Shown here piece after piece: positions 31,410 to 38,221 of a DNA stretch of 64,000 bases (positions within the stretch are counted from its first letter, which is position 1; the number at the start of each line of letters is the position of its first letter). Origin of the DNA: Octopus bimaculoides (lineage: Eukaryota); assembly GCF_001194135.2 (NCBI RefSeq), contig NC_068994.1, positions 39,101,799 to 39,165,798 on the forward strand. The letters are read 5' to 3'. The position numbers were made by a program, and so were the translations under genes. Under the pieces are notes generated by a model. It was not told the origin of the DNA and searched no databases. It was given only the letters and a program-made list of their open reading frames with translations.

Positions 31410-31675
31410 TTAGATGTCTGATGCTGTCTTTGGTAAAGCAGGCAGTGGCTTGCTAAAGGAAGAAAAGCCACATTTTGTTGGTAATGTGTGTGAGAGGATT
31501 GTTGTGCTAAGGTTATTAGTTCTAATTGAAGACTGTGCATGTAAGGAAGTAACATTAGTGTGTCCAGTAGTGTTGAAATTTCCTGTCTGATATGAAGAAT
31601 TGCTGCCAGAATAAGCATAAACTCGGGACTGACTTGTTGAGGCTTGCTGGAAGTCATTTTGGTCAGGATGAAGAC
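31410..31675 (-). CDS. PCDH: Protocadherin exon 3 (terminal coding exon, 266 nt incl. TAA)
   Basis: Polypyrimidine acceptor ttcttccttttttcaaAG|GT CTT CAT (phase 1). Reads GLHPDQNDFQQASTSQSRVYAYSGSNSSYQ...KCGFSSFSKPLPALPKTASDI* (within ORF 31410..31706). Ser/Thr-rich, non-microsatellite sequence. Confidence 0.82.
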
Positions 31676-32129
31676 CTTTGAAAAAAGGAAGAATACAATC
31701 AAACATTGACTTTAGTAGTGATTATTAAGATAATAAGAGGACTATAAATATTTCCAAAATCAAACTGTATCATAAAGATTTTTTAGTGTTACATCTCCTA
31801 CACATACACCATATTGTACACTAAATATATAGTATAGTAAATGTTTAATCAAATGAACATAAGACAATATTATAAAGCATAGTAATGATCATCGTTTAGC
31901 CCTAGTTTACTTAGAATAACATTATTTTCTTACAGGGATATGCAGTCAACTTTTATGGCTAGGTGTTGTCAAAAGAATCTAAACTCATTTTCATGACTCT
32001 GAGCAAAAAATAAAGCATAGAGCTGACTCTAATTGTGTTTAAATTCAGAATAAAAAAGCTCTGATCTAGGTAAGGAAACTAGCAAGCCTAGTCTAATATC
32101 TTATATGAGAATAGTGGTATTATGAGCCA

Positions 32130-32700
32130 GGCTGTGTTGTAGGGAAGGACTGGAAGTGAGGGAGTATGCATGTCCTGTTGGAAGTGGAGCTTGTGGGTCC
32201 CACCAGAAGGGCTGTGATGGGCATGTGGGGTTGGCAAAGCACAAGCAGCCAGTCGGTGGTGGACAGTGTTTGAGAGCAGACGTGTCAGATTGTTGAAAGA
32301 GATTACATATAATTAATTAGAAGTAATAGCCATAATTACTCCAGTGAATTTAAATTTCAGGTAGGTGTCCTCTGAGATATTTCTTTCATTACTCTCTGCT
32401 TTTTACCTCATTGAATTGGTTTGGAGGAAGGAACTGTGCTCATAGTCTTCACATTTCCTCTGAGACTTGTGCGACAGATGTGGCTTATGTTTCTCTTGAA
32501 CAGGTACAAGTTGACAGGAAAACCATATGCAGAGAGTGACTTACACAAGACCAAGGTGCTGAGAAGGGAGGTGTGTGCATAGTGGTTAGTTTGGTGCCTG
32601 AGTTGAGGGGATGGGAACAATACGGGTAAAAGAAGGAGTAAAGACAAGTAAGCTGTAAGTACCTGTGTGGCAGTGATGATGGGTAGGGGCAAGTATTCAG
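32130..32700 (-). mobile_element. Possible CR1/Jockey-type RT remnant
   Basis: LCKSLSAYGFPVNLY resembles LxKLxSYGF of RT subdomain 3; heavily decayed. Confidence 0.35.
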
Positions 32701-33348
32701 CCAGCTCTATGGAGTTAAATCACTGTAGTTGCTATAGAAAAGGCAAAGATGAAGCTCTTATAAAAGACTGTTTATGCACAAATAACTTAAGTTTCATTGA
32801 GGAATCAGTCAGAGGACTGCAAAATTGATTTGAATTATGAAAGGGAAATGGAAAAATTGCATCGAAAATTAAGTTCAGTGGCATTGGACAAATAAGCATG
32901 ATATGTATGTTAGAAAGAGATCAGTATGCATATGAAAATATTTAGAAAGTGAAGAGTTTACAACAGTGAAGTAATTTACAAGAGCTCGATATTTTTAGTA
33001 CATTATTGGTAATCATTAGAGTATTGAATGGAATATATTGTGTCAATTGTTCTGATTCTTTGTACACCGAGTTCAAATCCTGCCAAGGTCATCTTTGCCT
33101 TTTATCCATTTGGGTCAGTAAAAAAAGTTCCAATCTAGTAAAGTGGATTGAAAAAAATATCTTGCAGGGTCTACTCCAGCTTTATGCTTCAGTGCCTGCA
33201 ATGGTATTAATGAAAGGCTTGATGTGCCCTAAAATGGTGACCTTTTCCTTAGACAATATCGGTAGAGTAGAGAGAGAAGACCCATATGGAAGTCTCCCCC
33301 TCCATGACGCTGTTGTTGACCAAAGCCTGTACATACAAAATGCAGATA

Positions 33349-34137
33349 CCAGGTGTGAAGGATAAATTGTCCCCGTTTTATACTTTTGATTTTGCACATG
33401 CACATTGTTTGTTTTTGATTTTGTTAACTACACAGTATAGTAGGGTCTGTTGGGCACTGTCTGTGAGAAAAACAGCACAATTCACTCTGCCGGAAATTTG
33501 GAAATGACATACTGTACTGTTTGGCATTCACACTGGAAAGTCTGATACGAACAGGTAGTAAACACACAGAGCAACTATTGCCTTGTCATGTCCCCAAAAC
33601 ATATCCCAAGAGTGATAAAATCAAACATCCAGTCAACATCATGGTGTTTGGAGTGATCTTTTATGATGGTGACATTATGCCTCCATTCATCTTACCACAT
33701 GGCCTCTGACTCAACACGGAGGTATACATCAAGTGCCTGGAGGAGGTAGTGGCTGTCAGACAATTCCTGCTACCACATTATTCCTAACATCTGGCCACAT
33801 AAATCCCCAGACTACAATCCCCTTGGTTATTATGTGTGGGGTGCAGTTCAGCGAGAAACCAACAAAATTCCTTGTAAGACCAAAGATGAACTGATGGTAA
33901 GAATTTTGGCAGCATTCACCAACTTAAACAAGGAGACCATCCAGAAGAGTTGCAGAAGGTTCTGAAGTCGTTTGGAGGTTGTGGTTGATGCCAATGGCGA
34001 TTTTATTGAATAAATTTACTCTTTAGTATTTCGAGATATTTTTATGTAATTTTGGTAAATATATCTGATAAAATAAGATGTCAGTATTAATTTCATTGTT
34101 GCGTAATTTAAACGACAATATATTAACTGTACCCTGT
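33349..34137 (+). mobile_element. Tc1/mariner (maT, DD37D-like) internally deleted remnant
   Basis: KHPVNIMVFGVI…GDIMPPF; IWPHKSPDYNPLGYYVWGAVQRETNK…KSCRRF*SRLEVVVDANGDFIE*; right end …ctgtaccctg; left end caggtgtgaaggataaattgtc is an imperfect TIR. Confidence 0.8.
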
Positions 34138-36191: not shown

Positions 36192-36234
36192 CTGCATACC
36201 ACAGTTTCTGGGTTATTTCTCTTCATCAGTACAG
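36192..36234 (-). ncRNA. Minimal type-I hammerhead ribozyme-like motif (core intact)
   Basis: CTGTA-CTGATGA-AGAG-aaataa-CCCA-GAAA-CTGTGG-T-A-TGCAG; stem I CTGTA/TGCAG; stem II weakened (GAG/CCC). Confidence 0.6.
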
Positions 36235-36499
36235 AATAACTGCTTGGCTAGATATGGCACTGCTAAATCTTTGTTCAAAATACAAAATTTTCAAAGTGAC
36301 ACAGTCACTGATCTAATAAATAAAAAATAGATTATGCTGGCATATAATCTTTACTCTAGAGTATTGTTACTGAATGTCTCTCGTGAAGAGATTTAGAAGT
36401 AATAATTTTTCTATTTATTAGATCAGTGACTGTGTCGCTTTGAAAATTATATATTTTGAACAAAGATTTAGCAGTGCCATCTCTAGCCAAGCAGTTATT

Positions 36500-36542
36500 C
36501 TGTGCTAACAAAGGGAAATGACCCAGAAACTGCAGTACGCAG
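36500..36542 (+). ncRNA. Decayed hammerhead copy (core mutated)
   Basis: CTGTG-CTAACAA-AGGG-aaatga-CCCA-GAAA-CTGCAG-T-A-CGCAG; retains GGG/CCC stem II and palindromic ACTGCAGT stem III, but CTGATGA is mutated to CTAACAA. Confidence 0.55.
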
Positions 36543-38067
36543 ATATTGCTTGTGCTGAGTGGGGATACTAAACTCCCTTGTTCGAAAATATAAGTACACA
36601 GACAGTGTGTTGCATAGCCAGCTTGAGACGATGTTTCCTGGGGTTAAATAACTGTAACATTAATCCTAACCAGGACTGCCGCTTTATGCTGGCTAATAAT
36701 CTTTACTATATATATATATATCATCAGTAGATCATAAATCATAAACCTGAAAGAGAGGTACACTCCAATTTATAGAGCAATAGAGTATTTTGACAATGTT
36801 TGTTATGGCTTGTTCATAGGGTTACCCAGGTTTTCACATTCTTAAAGCACTTAGCTTTACACACATCTTATCATCTAAATACAATAAGTTAATGCATGAT
36901 CATGTGCATCAGTAATTTCCAGCCCTTTCTTTATCATTTAAACTCTTGATTTTTATGTATTTTACCACTTATCCTCTTCTTCTGTGCAAAAATAAAAACT
37001 AAATAATCTCCATAAATGAAATTCAAAGTGAGATATTCAGAATGTCATGTGCAAAAAAAAACTCTTTAATTGAAATTTCCCTTTCTGTTTCAGAAAGTGA
37101 TTCAAATCTTAACTGCTTAGCAGTCATTGTTAGTGACACTCAAAGAAAAGGGAGAGGTAATTTCAAAGTATGTTTCTTAAAGTTAATTTACATGCATTGT
37201 AAAAGGTAAGTTCACATCTGTGCCAACCTGCTATCTTTAGGATAGTATACTACCACTAGTTTACACACACACTAAATGCAGCATTTATTATTTGACTTCA
37301 GTGTCTGTAATATTTTGGGATTGAGGAGTGTCATTTTACTTGTTTGGGTTTTGGATTTTGATGTATATATATATATATACACAAATACTGATGCCAAAAT
37401 CTTAGTTCTGAGTTCATGATCCTTTATTTCAATAACCCAGCTATTTAATCATTCAAATGCACATTTATAATGTACTGGGAAATAGCAATCCCAAAAAGAC
37501 AACACTGTGCTGAATCTGTGAATGTGTTATGAGTTGTTTTTTTTTACCCCCAGCATTTCAATTTGTTTTGTTATATAGATTTTCTTTCACCAACTCAAAA
37601 GGTTGAGAAATGAATGAAAACAAATGATATCTATGTAATTACCATTGTGGACATTTTTGCTTAGAGCTAAGTGTTTCATATCTTTCAACAGACATTGATT
37701 TGTTGTTATGTTTGATTTTTTTATGCCAATGTATTTAGTTAAAAATGTGCATCTACGCATAAACAGAATCAATATTTGTAGTAGACATAGCCTATAAAGG
37801 AACTGGGAGCACAATGACATATAGGGCTAAGAGGTAAATAAATTAATTATCCAAAATTATTTACTAAGACAAATAAAAACTAAAAAATTGCCATGAGTTG
37901 AATTTACTGTTCAATATGAGATACCTACCAAATATTTTTCATGTAAGATAAATATTTATCAGTTTCTGGTCCTTATTTGCTGCATCAGTTTCTCACATCT
38001 TTGCAAAGAACATCTGTATTTAGGTCTACATTACACAAATACCAAAACATAAATTTCATTGAATTAC

Positions 38068-38221
38068 CTGATAGCTCTTCATAATGTGATCCCACTTTCT
38101 CAATGAATTCACAGTCATTCTGAGATTTTGCTGTCATTTGTCGGTAATTGTAAAAATTACATTGAAAGTCTTCTTTATTTTTTCTATGACTGGCAGGTCT
38201 GTGAGCATTTTGAACATATAT
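38068..38221 (-). CDS. PCDH: Protocadherin exon 2 (cytoplasmic, 154 nt, phase 0 to phase 1)
   Basis: Acceptor tatttttcatatAG| and donor TCAG|GTAATT. Open in phase 0: IYVQNAHRPASHRKNKEDFQCNFYNYRQMTAKSQNDCEFIEKVGSHYEELS(G). Length 3n+1 exactly bridges the exon 1 (phase 0) and exon 3 (phase 1) boundaries. Confidence 0.85.

What the first reader, a model, noticed from the sequence alone, without database searches (positions are those of the whole stretch)
31410..38221. Reconstructed protocadherin tail combines a Src-type SH2 site (YEEL), a WIRS-like motif (FSSFSK) and a class-I SH3 ligand (KPLPALP)
Seen: exon 2 ends GSHYEELS (YEEL at 38083-38072) and exon 3 ends CGFSSFSKPLPALPKTASDI* (FSSFSK 31466-31449, KPLPALP 31451-31431). 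Established: Src-family SH2 domains prefer pY-E-E-I; class-I Src SH3 ligands follow +xxPxxP (RPLPPLP); the WAVE-complex-binding WIRS motif is bulky-hydrophobic-x-T/S-F-x-x (FSTFGK in vertebrate PCDH10). YEEL also fits the YxxL endocytic signal. Inference: this independently expanded cephalopod-type protocadherin may dock a Src-family kinase bivalently and recruit the WAVE actin complex through overlapping WIRS and SH3 sites, which could act as a switch. That would parallel vertebrate protocadherin signalling. The tail is invisible in the ORF track because it needs splicing.
Basis: partly seen in the sequence, partly recalled or inferred. Interest (0 to 1): 0.8.

Follow-up and report, generated by a model that had tools for sequence, protein, structure and literature searches.

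The report
Octopus protocadherin tail docking motifs
The spliced tail of this already-annotated Octopus bimaculoides protocadherin carries a tyrosine motif (YEEL) and a proline motif (KPLPALP) that are kept across dozens of octopus paralogues and look like real docking sites, whereas the WAVE-complex (WIRS) match meets the published rule in only 5 of 53 related tails and is common by chance.

Summary
Exons at 54815-52410, 38221-38068 and 31675-31410 (minus strand) splice in frame to a 941-aa protein. It is identical to RefSeq XP_014774857.1 (O. bimaculoides protocadherin beta-15), so the gene model is not new.

Exons 2-3 encode a disordered tail. It evolves almost neutrally (dN/dS 0.88 against O. 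sinensis) except for short islands.

- **KPLPALP:** [RK]PLPxΦP occurs in 45 of 53 distinct tails, including squid/cuttlefish-like ones. The invariant or near-invariant columns are exactly the class-I SH3 consensus residues.
- **YEEL:** Y-E-[ET]-[LI], usually followed by P-G, ends exon 2 in 48 of 59 full-length octopod paralogues. The amino acids are kept while the codons vary.
- **Both together:** the two motifs co-occur in 31 of 59, across two tail classes.
- **FSSFSK (WIRS):** only 5 of 53 tails meet Φ-x-[ST]-F, because most carry Y at the F position. The Argonauta orthologue lacks the bulky Φ. The pattern appears in 28% of shuffled tails.

A tail profile searched against 1.84 billion proteins found cephalopod sequences only.

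Docking of SH3 and SH2 partners is plausible and apparently undescribed. Which partners bind (Src-family kinase, Abi/WAVE or AP-2) is untested.

The parts
52410..54815 (-). Exon 1. It encodes the signal peptide, the cadherin ectodomain, the TM segment (from about residue 688) and the first ~95 cytoplasmic residues. It ends ...SKEIHQ with donor CAG|GTAAGA (phase 0).
   Evidence: ORF list, sequence, Pfam Cadherin and Cadherin_2 on the orthologue, identity to XP_014774857.1.
38068..38221 (-). Exon 2, 154 nt, encoding IYVQNAH...GSHYEELS plus the first base of a Gly codon. Acceptor is tcatatag|, donor is G|GTAATT (phase 1).
   Evidence: The same exon is found in O. sinensis at 94% nucleotide identity. 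The split-Gly exon boundary directly after the Y-E-x-Φ-x codons is seen in all 6 genes examined.
38072..38083 (-). YEEL. This is the window gene's copy of the family motif Y-E-[ET]-[LI]-(P)-(G). It is a candidate phosphotyrosine/SH2 site and fits YxxΦ.
   Evidence: Present in 48 of 59 octopod paralogues with tails of at least 150 aa. E48 is at least 90% conserved. Synonymous codon variation: TAT/TAC, GAA/GAG, CTA/TTG/CTT/TTA.
31410..31675 (-). Exon 3 coding part: the last two bases of the Gly codon, then LHPDQ...KPLPALPKTASDI, then stop TAA at 31412-31410.
   Evidence: Present in O. sinensis at 94% nucleotide identity.
31413..31487 (-). C-terminal 25 residues, TLPTKCGFSSFSKPLPALPKTASDI. The block shows no substitution between O. 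bimaculoides, O. sinensis and O. vulgaris. It aligns with the family module WNLPx[RK]NSF[TS][ST]YxKPLPAΦPK.
   Evidence: Probability of no change in the last 25 residues, given 17 changes in 139, is 0.027.
31449..31466 (-). FSSFSK. It fits the WIRS consensus Φ-x-[ST]-F-x-x, but it is a Y-to-F variant of the family's F-[TS]-[ST]-Y-x-K.
   Evidence: Strict WIRS in 5 of 53 tails, Y variant in 25 of 53. Consensus taken from PMC8209697.
31431..31451 (-). KPLPALP, matching the class-I SH3 ligand consensus +xΦPxΦP. It is the best-conserved element of the tail.
   Evidence: It is the only KPLPxxP in all six frames of the window.
32707..32724 (-). Counterpart of the alternative terminal mini-exon (SDLTP*) used by the tail-less O. 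sinensis isoform X2. In the window the matching acceptor reads ...ctac|AGT instead of ...ctag|AGT. An AG two bases downstream would give an immediate TGA.

Best explanation
This is the annotated three-exon O. bimaculoides protocadherin gene, XP_014774857.1. Exons 2 and 3 encode a ~139-residue intrinsically disordered cytoplasmic tail. Its spacers drift almost neutrally, while a few short linear motifs are held by purifying selection.

1. Y-E-[ET]-[LI]-(P)-(G), at the last codons of exon 2.
2. [RK]-P-L-P-x-Φ-P, 5-10 residues from the C-terminus.

The most likely mechanism is inferred, not shown. The proline motif would be a class-I SH3-domain docking site. The tyrosine motif would be a phosphorylation-dependent SH2 site of the pYEE[IL] type. 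It may also act as a YxxΦ sorting signal. Together they would form a two-part cassette (median spacing 84 residues) that couples the adhesion receptor to cytoplasmic tyrosine-kinase or actin adaptors.

The canonical WIRS in this gene arises because an aromatic position that is Y in most paralogues is F in this orthogroup. WAVE-complex recruitment through it is at best orthogroup-specific. Alternative splicing that omits these exons gives tail-less isoforms.
For: **Gene model.** The splice sites are canonical and in phase. The product is identical to XP_014774857.1. 941-aa orthologues exist in O. sinensis and O. vulgaris, and a 989-aa one in Argonauta.

**Disorder.** AF2 run with the 35-tail alignment gives no secondary structure, mean pLDDT 58.6 and pTM 0.19. 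Confidence is locally higher over the two motif regions. No Pfam family matches the tail.

**Selection.** dN/dS against O. sinensis is 0.23 for the ectodomain and 0.875 for the tail. Yet there are no substitutions in GSHYEELSGLHP or in the last 25 residues; P = 0.0035 for both blocks, which were chosen post hoc.

**Conservation of the proline motif.** K127 is invariant. E48, L116, P117, F122, P128, L129, P130 and P133 are at least 90% conserved in 35 tails whose mean column identity is 23%. Class-I [RK]xxPxxP occurs in 49 of 53 distinct tails and [RK]PLPxΦP in 45 of 53.

**Conservation of the tyrosine motif.** Y-E-[ETI]-Φ occurs in 48 of 59 octopod paralogues with long tails. Of the 56 motif-bearing octopod proteins, 42 have P at +4.

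**Co-occurrence.** Both motifs occur together in 31 of 59, in two unrelated-looking tail classes: KPLPAΦP and YEEIP...RQLPSTP.

**Protein-level selection.** Codons vary synonymously at the conserved residues in six genes.

**Depth.** Decapodiform-like tails keep RPLP[PS]VP at the C-terminus.

**Isoforms.** A tail-less isoform exists in O. sinensis, and exon-2-skipped transcripts were found.

**Established knowledge (from memory).** Src-family SH2 domains select pY-E-E-I; the hamster middle-T peptide is EPQpYEEIPIYL. Src/Fyn SH3 class-I ligands are RPLPPLP-like.
Against: - No binding, phosphorylation or expression data were available.
- Motif matches are permissive. YEEL and YETL also fit YxxΦ, and L at +3 or T at +2 is suboptimal for Src SH2.
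- The residues upstream of the Tyr are not a good Src-family kinase substrate context.
- The SH3 partner cannot be named from sequence. Abi, cortactin, Nck and others also bind PxxP.
- 11 of 59 long-tailed paralogues lack the Tyr motif, with C, K, T or R at the Tyr position, so it is dispensable in some.
- The decapodiform sample is tiny, and its exon-2 copies lack the Tyr (GMEVPG, HREEMPG).
Confidence: 0.55

Rival explanations
1. The tail docks a Src-family kinase bivalently (SH2 on pYEEL, SH3 on KPLPALP). The overlapping FSSFSK WIRS recruits the WAVE complex in competition with the SH3, giving a switch.
For: - All three patterns are present.
- YE[ET][LI]P and [RK]xLPxxP co-occur in 31 of 59 paralogues.
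- 19 paralogues carry YEEI, mostly YEEIP, the classical Src SH2 peptide core (from memory).
- The invariant columns equal the +xΦPxΦP consensus.
- Vertebrate Pcdh-alpha binds Fyn (cited in PMC6339937).
- WIRS and the SH3 motif share K127, so simultaneous occupancy by two proteins is sterically unlikely (inference).
Against: - WIRS is canonical in only 5 of 53 tails.
- WIRS is not preserved in the Argonauta orthologue, which reads SPTFPK.
- WIRS is expected by chance in 28% of shuffles.
- A consensus-matching WIRS can be non-functional in cells (PMC8209697).
- No evidence identifies the SH3 or SH2 partner as a Src-family kinase.
Confidence: 0.15
2. A WAVE-complex-centred reading. The conserved C-terminal module F-[TS]-[ST]-[YF]-x-K-P-L-P-A-Φ-P is one bipartite WRC ligand. 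The aromatic part would sit in the Sra1/Abi2 WIRS pocket. The adjacent PxxP would bind the Abi SH3 domain, adding avidity rather than competing.
For: - For vertebrate Pcdh-alpha it was proposed that the WIRS (FITFGK) binds Sra1/Abi2 and that the constant-domain PXXP motifs may bind the Abi2 SH3 (PMC6047886).
- The octopus module S-F-[TS]-[ST]-[YF]-x-K resembles D-F-I-T-F-G-K in pattern.
- The F (F122) and the following aromatic are conserved next to the PxxP.
- Y and F interchange several times among paralogues, which suggests a hydrophobic-pocket contact rather than phosphotyrosine.
Against: - The published consensus requires F at position 4, and 25 of 53 tails have Y there.
- Whether Y is tolerated is unknown.
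- Decapodiform-like tails keep the PxxP but not the aromatic part.
- The specificity of the Abi SH3 for +PLPxΦP was not tested here.
Confidence: 0.15
3. A trafficking reading. YE[ET][LI] is a YxxΦ signal read by the AP-2 mu2 subunit, and it controls endocytosis and surface level of the protocadherin. The C-terminal module binds some other sorting or scaffold protein. This reading does not exclude SH3 docking.
For: - Y, E(+1) and the hydrophobic +3 residue are the conserved positions, while +2 varies between E, T and I. That pattern fits YxxΦ at least as well as pYEEI.
- The motif lies in a disordered cytoplasmic tail.
- The YxxΦ rule is established knowledge.
Against: - The conserved E at +1 and P-G at +4/+5 are not features of YxxΦ signals.
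- YxxΦ occurs in 75% of shuffled tails, so the fit carries little information.
- Nothing links the tail to endocytosis.
Confidence: 0.2
4. The motifs have no docking function. They are kept by descent among recent paralogues, or by nucleotide-level constraints. An example would be the purine-rich GAAGAG acting as a splicing enhancer at the end of a small, skippable exon.
For: - Exon 2 is 154 nt and lies between introns of 14 kb and 6 kb.
- Exon 2 is skipped in some transcripts.
- YEEL sits 4-15 nt from the donor.
- The expansion is lineage-specific and partly recent.
Against: - Spacers between the motifs are only about 20-25% identical, while the motif columns are at least 90% conserved.
- The codons for Y, E, E, L and for K, P, L, P, A, x, P differ synonymously between genes. 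This argues for selection on the protein and against a fixed RNA element.
- The PxxP motif persists in decapodiform-like sequences.
Confidence: 0.05

Closest known systems
Vertebrate clustered protocadherin-alpha (CNR) constant cytoplasmic domain
   Same: It is a protocadherin tail encoded by small downstream exons. It carries a WIRS (FITFGK) near the C-terminus plus PXXP motifs proposed to bind the Abi2 SH3 (PMC6047886). It associates with the Src-family kinase Fyn (cited in PMC6339937).
   Different: - In octopus each gene has its own private tail exons, not constant exons shared by many variable exons.
- There is no detectable sequence homology: the tail profile hit no vertebrate protein.
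- Most octopus tails have Y where WIRS needs F.
- The lysine-rich end of Pcdh-alpha is absent.
Delta-2 protocadherins (PCDH10/17/18/19) with WIRS FSTFGK
   Same: Non-clustered protocadherins whose disordered tail carries Φ-S-T-F-G-K, which binds the WAVE regulatory complex (PMC7339444). The window gene's FSSFSK differs at only two of the six positions (T to S at the T/S slot, G to S at an 'x' slot).
   Different: The WIRS is highly conserved in delta-2 orthologues. Here it is canonical in 5 of 53 tails and is lost in the Argonauta orthologue. CM1 and CM2 motifs were reported absent from octopus protocadherins (PMC6339937).
Src-family SH3 class-I ligands (RPLPPLP type) and the pYEEI SH2 ligand (hamster polyoma middle-T EPQpYEEIPIYL)
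   Same: KPLPALP matches +pΦPpΦP residue for residue apart from K for R and A for P. 19 paralogues carry YEEI, mostly YEEIP. The window gene has YEEL. These comparisons rest on established knowledge recalled from memory.
   Different: The reference ligands were defined by peptide libraries and a viral protein. No octopus SH3 or SH2 specificity data exist. YETL, in 19 paralogues, departs from the optimum at +2.
Bipartite Src-family kinase activators such as p130Cas and Sin/Efs (a PxxP SH3 ligand plus a pY-based SH2 ligand in one disordered region)
   Same: They share the architecture: a proline-rich class-I-type ligand and a YxxΦ/pY site on one disordered chain. This is an analogy from established knowledge.
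   Different: Those are cytosolic scaffolds with motifs tens of residues apart in the opposite or a variable order. Here the Tyr motif precedes the PxxP by a median of 84 residues, on a transmembrane adhesion receptor. Function is untested.

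Membership tests
WIRS (WRC-interacting receptor sequence) | Sequence fits Φ-x-T/S-F-x-x, with Φ a bulky hydrophobic residue | tested here: met
   FSSFSK at 31466-31449. Consensus as quoted in PMC8209697. The same pattern occurs in 28% of shuffled tails.
WIRS (WRC-interacting receptor sequence) | Located in an accessible, unstructured cytoplasmic region of a membrane protein | tested here: met
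   The motif lies downstream of the TM segment. The AF2 model has no secondary structure and a mean pLDDT of 58.6.
WIRS (WRC-interacting receptor sequence) | Key residues (Φ, T/S, F) conserved among orthologues and paralogues | tested here: not met
   - Strict motif in 5 of 53 distinct tails; 25 of 53 have Y at the F position.
- Conserved in three Octopus species.
- The Argonauta orthologue has SPTFPK, with no bulky Φ.
- Absent from decapodiform-like tails.
WIRS (WRC-interacting receptor sequence) | Binds the Sra1/Abi2 surface of the assembled WAVE complex, and binding is abolished by an S/T-F to A-A mutation | not testable with these tools
   Needs a pull-down with purified WRC.
Class-I SH3 ligand (+xΦPxΦP) | Sequence fits [RK]-x-Φ-P-x-Φ-P | tested here: met
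   K-P-L-P-A-L-P at 31451-31431. The stricter [RK]PΦPxΦP form occurs in 0.001% of shuffles.
Class-I SH3 ligand (+xΦPxΦP) | The consensus-defining residues are the conserved ones | tested here: met
   K127 is invariant. P128, L129, P130 and P133 are at least 90% conserved, while positions 131 and 132 vary conservatively. 49 of 53 tails fit [RK]xxPxxP. Codons vary synonymously.
Class-I SH3 ligand (+xΦPxΦP) | Binds a defined SH3 domain (Src family, Abi or another) | not testable with these tools
   No complex prediction or binding assay was available.
Src-family SH2 ligand (pY-E-E-I/L/V) | Sequence fits Y-E-E-[ILV] | tested here: met
   YEEL at 38083-38072. Occurs in 0.08% of shuffles. Counts among octopod paralogues: YEEI 19, YEEL 15, YETL 19.
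Src-family SH2 ligand (pY-E-E-I/L/V) | The tyrosine is phosphorylated in vivo and binding depends on phosphorylation | not testable with these tools
   No phosphoproteome was on hand.
YxxΦ endocytic signal | Y-x-x-[LIMVF] in a cytoplasmic tail | tested here: met
   YEEL fits, but 75% of shuffled tails contain such a pattern. The conserved E at +1 and P-G at +4/+5 are not explained by this family.
Vertebrate-type clustered protocadherin locus (variable exons sharing constant tail exons) | Many ectodomain exons spliced to one shared set of constant cytoplasmic exons | tested here: not met
   - The window holds one ectodomain exon and one pair of tail exons.
- Five other genes each have their own, divergent exons 2 and 3 in their own loci.
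Delta-protocadherin cytoplasmic motifs CM1/CM2/CM3 | Recognisable CM motifs, or homology of the tail to vertebrate tails | tested here: not met
   - No Pfam family matches the tail.
- The tail profile hit only cephalopod sequences among 1.84 billion representatives.
- The literature reports no CM1-3 in octopus (PMC6339937).
- CM patterns were not scanned directly.

The most novel reading that the evidence does not exclude
A two-part docking cassette, Y-E-[ET]-[LI]-P followed 35-130 residues later by a C-terminal [RK]-x-L-P-x-x-P, is an ancestral feature of coleoid protocadherin tails. It would predate the independent octopus and squid expansions. It would wire these receptors to Src-family kinase and/or WAVE-Abi actin signalling, a convergent counterpart of vertebrate Pcdh-alpha (Fyn, WIRS, PXXP). 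That would contradict the published impression that octopus tails have no analogy with vertebrate ones.
Probability: 0.2. Interest if true: 0.7.

Novelty: new member of a known kind. Interest (0 to 1): 0.45.

Why it matters
Octopus protocadherins are a textbook case of an independent expansion of neuronal recognition molecules. How they signal inside the cell is unknown. The accessible literature reports only ectodomain, TM and PP1-type motifs, and "no analogy with vertebrates" for the intracellular domain (PMC6339937; PMC7339444).

This work shows that an otherwise fast-evolving tail keeps an SH3-type and an SH2/YxxΦ-type motif across dozens of paralogues and into decapodiform-like sequences. 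That gives concrete, cheap hypotheses to test with peptides, SH3/SH2 domains and the WRC. It also gives a handle on tail-containing versus tail-less isoforms.

The result is a prediction at motif level on an already annotated gene. It is not a new kind of system.

Tried and rejected
1. **Word-index searches of the tail.** A search with the tail alone found nothing. A search with the 35-tail alignment found only 2 proteins. Both are false negatives of the index, because full-length orthologues with 88% identical tails exist. The exhaustive HMM search was used instead.
2. **Pfam on the tail.** No family matched.
3. **PDB sequence search with the C-terminal 28 residues.** It returned only an irrelevant weak hit.
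4. **Dual coding of exon 3.** The alternative frame is open for 95 codons in the window. It contains stop codons in O. sinensis, so this is chance.
5. **Shared constant exons as in vertebrates.** Rejected, because each gene has private tail exons.
6. **Other protocadherin genes or tail exons in the window.** None were found, apart from a weak 30-42-aa similarity at 7256-7381.
7. **A splicing-enhancer explanation for the E-E codons.** Rejected on the synonymous codon variation.
8. **Papers not held.** Chen et al. 2014 and Albertin et al. 2015 could not be read. The WIRS rule was taken from papers that quote it.
9. **Looking up the spliced window protein in the assemblies.** Identity was established through the cluster listing instead.

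Full report
**Observation.** Exon 2 ends ...GGA TCA CAT TAT GAA GAG CTA TCA G|gtaatt, with YEEL at 38083-38072. Exon 3 ends TGT GGC TTT TCT TCC TTT AGC AAG CCA CTG CCT GCT TTA CCA AAG ACA GCA TCA GAC ATC TAA. FSSFSK is at 31466-31449, KPLPALP at 31451-31431 and the stop at 31412-31410.

The 816-codon cadherin ORF has a donor CAG|GTAAGA at 52410 in phase 0. Exon 2 (38221-38068, 154 nt) follows a tcatatag acceptor. Exon 3 (31675-) follows ttttcaaag. A Gly codon is split across the exon 2/3 junction. Joining the three exons gives a 941-aa open reading frame.

**Identity of the gene.** A full-length search returned a 941-aa O. sinensis model at 94% identity and an Argonauta hians orthologue at 65%. 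The 90% cluster of the O. sinensis protein also holds XP_014774857.1 / A0A0L8H7C8, "protocadherin beta-15 [Octopus bimaculoides]". That protein is residue-for-residue identical to my reconstruction.

So the window is O. bimaculoides, and the "reconstructed" tail is already in RefSeq and UniProt for three Octopus species. The same cluster contains an 807-aa O. sinensis isoform X2. It ends EIHQ-SDLTP, which makes it a tail-less form.

**Nature of the tail.** No Pfam family matches it. AlphaFold2 run with a 35-sequence tail alignment predicts no secondary structure, with mean pLDDT 58.6 and pTM 0.19. Confidence is somewhat higher only around residues 41-50 and over the last 20-30 residues.

The orthologous O. 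sinensis locus is 88-93% identical in the introns. Against it, Nei-Gojobori dN/dS is 0.23 for the ectodomain, 0.40 for the TM and exon-1 cytoplasmic part, and 0.875 for exons 2-3 (19 non-synonymous and 6 synonymous changes).

The 17 amino-acid differences avoid GSHYEELSGLHP and the last 25 residues entirely. The probability is 0.0035 for both blocks and 0.027 for the last 25 alone; the blocks were chosen after seeing the data. This is the signature of a disordered linker that carries short linear motifs.

**Family comparison.** 35 of the top hits end in a KPLP-type C-terminus. Aligning their tails gives a mean column identity of 23%, with sharp islands:
- PYRYSEMST
- DSGxGWSE
- HYE[ET]LPG, at the end of exon 2
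- RKSLPQ
- NDVIDLKSIRV
- WNLPx[RK]NSF[TS][ST]YxKPLPAΦPK, at the C-terminus

K127 is invariant. E48, L116, P117, F122, P128, L129, P130 and P133 are at least 90% conserved, numbering the window tail.

The window gene is a divergent member. It has lost the DSGxGW, NDVIDLKS and W-N elements. It retains HYEEL and [ST]F-x-KPLPA[LI]P, and so does its Argonauta orthologue (THYEELPG ... SPTFPKPLPAIP).

Counts over 53 distinct C-termini, pooled from all searches:

| Pattern | Tails |
|---|---|
| [RK]xxPxxP | 49 |
| [RK]PLPx[LIVM]P | 45 |
| strict Φ-x-[ST]-F directly upstream | 5 (window, O. sinensis orthologue, P0021, P0036, P0059) |
| the same with Y instead of F | 25 |

Among octopod hits with at least 150 cytoplasmic residues, 48 of 59 carry Y-E-[ETI]-[LIVM]. 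Across all 56 motif-bearing octopod proteins the split is YEEI 19, YETL 19 and YEEL 15, and 42 have P at +4.

The Tyr motif and a C-terminal [RK]x[LIVP]PxxP co-occur in 31 of 59. This holds in two different tail classes. One is KPLPAΦP, with spacing of about 63-133 residues. The other is YEEIP...RYVKPPERQLPSTPDVV, with spacing of about 36. Across all 31 the median spacing is 84.

**Selection acts on the protein.** In six genes for which I fetched DNA, the conserved residues use different synonymous codons:
- Y: TAT, TAC
- E: GAA, GAG, at both positions
- L: CTA, TTG, CTT, TTA
- K: AAG, AAA
- P: CCA, CCC, CCT, CCG
- L: CTG, CTC, TTA

In all six genes exon 2 ends one codon after the Φ residue, with G|GTA. 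This rules out a purely nucleotide-level explanation such as a purine-rich splicing enhancer. It also shows that the exon architecture is conserved. Each gene has its own exons 2 and 3 in its own locus, unlike the shared constant exons of vertebrate clusters.

**Taxonomic breadth.** A profile of the 35 tails was searched without a word index against 1.84 billion representative proteins. It gave only 32 hits at E ≤ 1e-3. Every named hit is from Octopus or Argonauta.

Four unnamed hits end in RPLP[PS]VP or KPLPALP without the F-x-x-[FY] part (P0144, P0149, P0151, P0153). For two of them I recovered linked ectodomains. These group with Acanthosepion (cuttlefish) proteins ahead of any octopod protein. 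I therefore infer that they are decapodiform.

In that small sample the exon-2 copies keep DSGHGW but lack the Tyr (GMEVPG, HREEMPG). No bivalve, gastropod or vertebrate sequence was found. So the proline motif looks coleoid-wide. The Tyr motif is shown only for octopods. The tail as a whole is cephalopod-restricted at this sensitivity.

**Motif by motif.**

*KPLPALP.* This is a close match to the Src/Fyn class-I optimum RPLPPLP (+pΦPpΦP; from memory). The conserved columns are exactly the consensus-defining ones. It occurs in 0.001% of shuffles in the strict form. I regard an SH3-ligand function as likely, but the partner is open.

*YEEL.* It fits pY-E-E-[ILV]. Many paralogues carry YEEIP, the core of the classical middle-T Src-SH2 peptide (from memory). 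What is conserved, however, is Y, E(+1), Φ(+3), P(+4) and G(+5), with E or T at +2. The motif also fits YxxΦ. A phospho-dependent SH2 site is plausible but unproven.

*FSSFSK.* It fits the WIRS rule Φ-x-T/S-F-x-x (rule quoted). It resembles FSTFGK and FITFGK of vertebrate protocadherins. Three things weaken it. The rule is met by chance in 28% of shuffles. The family consensus has Y at the F position. The Argonauta orthologue lacks the bulky Φ. A consensus-matching WIRS can also be inactive in cells.

The repeated Y/F interchange suggests that an aromatic contact is what is conserved. Whether the WRC pocket tolerates Y is not known to me.

**Mechanism.** The best-supported reading is a disordered tail with two selected docking motifs: an SH3 class-I ligand and a Tyr-based site. 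Alternative splicing can remove both. Three specific models remain untested inferences, and I rank them below the generic docking statement:
2. A single bipartite WRC ligand (aromatic part plus the Abi SH3), as suggested for Pcdh-alpha in PMC6047886.
3. A trafficking role for YxxΦ.

**Comparison and novelty.** Functionally the closest known case is the vertebrate Pcdh-alpha constant domain, which has a WIRS, PXXP motifs and Fyn association. The delta-2 WIRS is the next closest. There is no detectable homology and the gene organisation differs, so any similarity would be parallel evolution.

The accessible literature lists only EC, TM and PP1-type octopus motifs. It states that no analogy to vertebrate intracellular motifs was found (PMC6339937), and reviews call cephalopod ICD signalling unexplored. 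I found no paper describing the YE[ET][LI]P or [RK]PLPxΦP motifs. However, Albertin 2015 and Wang and Ragsdale 2017 could not be read.

The gene is known, and the kinds of motif are known. The family-level conservation of this cassette appears to be a new, testable observation.

**Limits.** No binding, phosphorylation or expression data were available. The decapodiform sampling is minimal. The top-120 hit list biases the paralogue sample towards relatives of this gene. Reference specificities for SH2 and SH3 domains are recalled from memory.

Noticed in passing
window 31391-31675 (-): Exon 3 is open in a second frame for 95 codons (VFILTKMTSSKPQQ...). This is the frame that would be read if exon 2 were skipped. 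The same frame has stop codons in O. sinensis, so it is probably chance.
   Followed up: yes
window 32707-32724 (-); L001 24857: This is the counterpart of the mini-exon that ends the tail-less O. sinensis isoform X2 (EIHQ-SDLTP*). O. sinensis has the acceptor ...aactag|AGT. The window has ...aactac AGT, so that acceptor is lost. An AG two bases on would give an immediate TGA. Either way a tail-less product is possible.
   Followed up: partly
L004-L006 (Logan transcript contigs, decapodiform-like): In these transcripts exon 1 is joined directly to the last exon, skipping exon 2. This shifts the frame, so the protein ends after 22 residues and the RPLPSVP tail is left out of frame. Exon-2 skipping may be a regular way of making tail-less isoforms.
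   Followed up: partly
window 43632-43883 (-) and 41410-41631 (+), inside intron 1: Transposon remnants are present: a reverse-transcriptase fragment (RVT_1, E = 2.6e-6) and a hAT-family dimerisation domain (E = 1.6e-6). A G+C-richer block at 32-34 kb in intron 2 (40% against about 31%) is conserved with O. sinensis but has no Pfam match.
   Followed up: partly
window 7256-7381 (+): There is a weak translated similarity (E about 5e-4, 43-53% over 30-42 aa) to the C-terminal peptides of two short octopod protocadherin isoforms (P0040, P0077: LVDYNDPSTLSGTYFIDLGRRNGK). It could be a stray alternative terminal exon or a repeat.
   Followed up: no
paralogues P0082, P0094, P0096, P0112, P0115, P0119 (not in the window): A second octopod tail class ends ...YEEIP...HYQDRYVKPPERQLPSTPDVV. 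It again combines a YEEI motif with a class-I-like R-Q-L-P-S-T-P, only about 36 residues apart.
   Followed up: partly
paralogue tails (alignment A1); absent from the window gene: Further conserved islands of unknown function are PYRYSEMST, DSGxGWSE, RKSLPQ, NDVIDLKSIRV and W-N-L-P. The window orthogroup has lost or degraded all of them. The cuttlefish protein P0056 instead carries repeated [DS]DY[LV]EP motifs.
   Followed up: no
window 16235-16407, 21129-21183, 28256-28336, 30584-30649, 42456-43164, 56080-56089: These are assembly gaps (runs of N, 1,094 bases in all) flanked by TA/TG/CA microsatellites. The long 'ORFs' listed there are artefacts of the Ns and of simple repeats.
   Followed up: yes
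(tool behaviour): The word-indexed protein search missed full-length proteins whose tails are 88-100% identical to the query. Negative results from it for short, low-complexity tails should not be trusted.
   Followed up: yes
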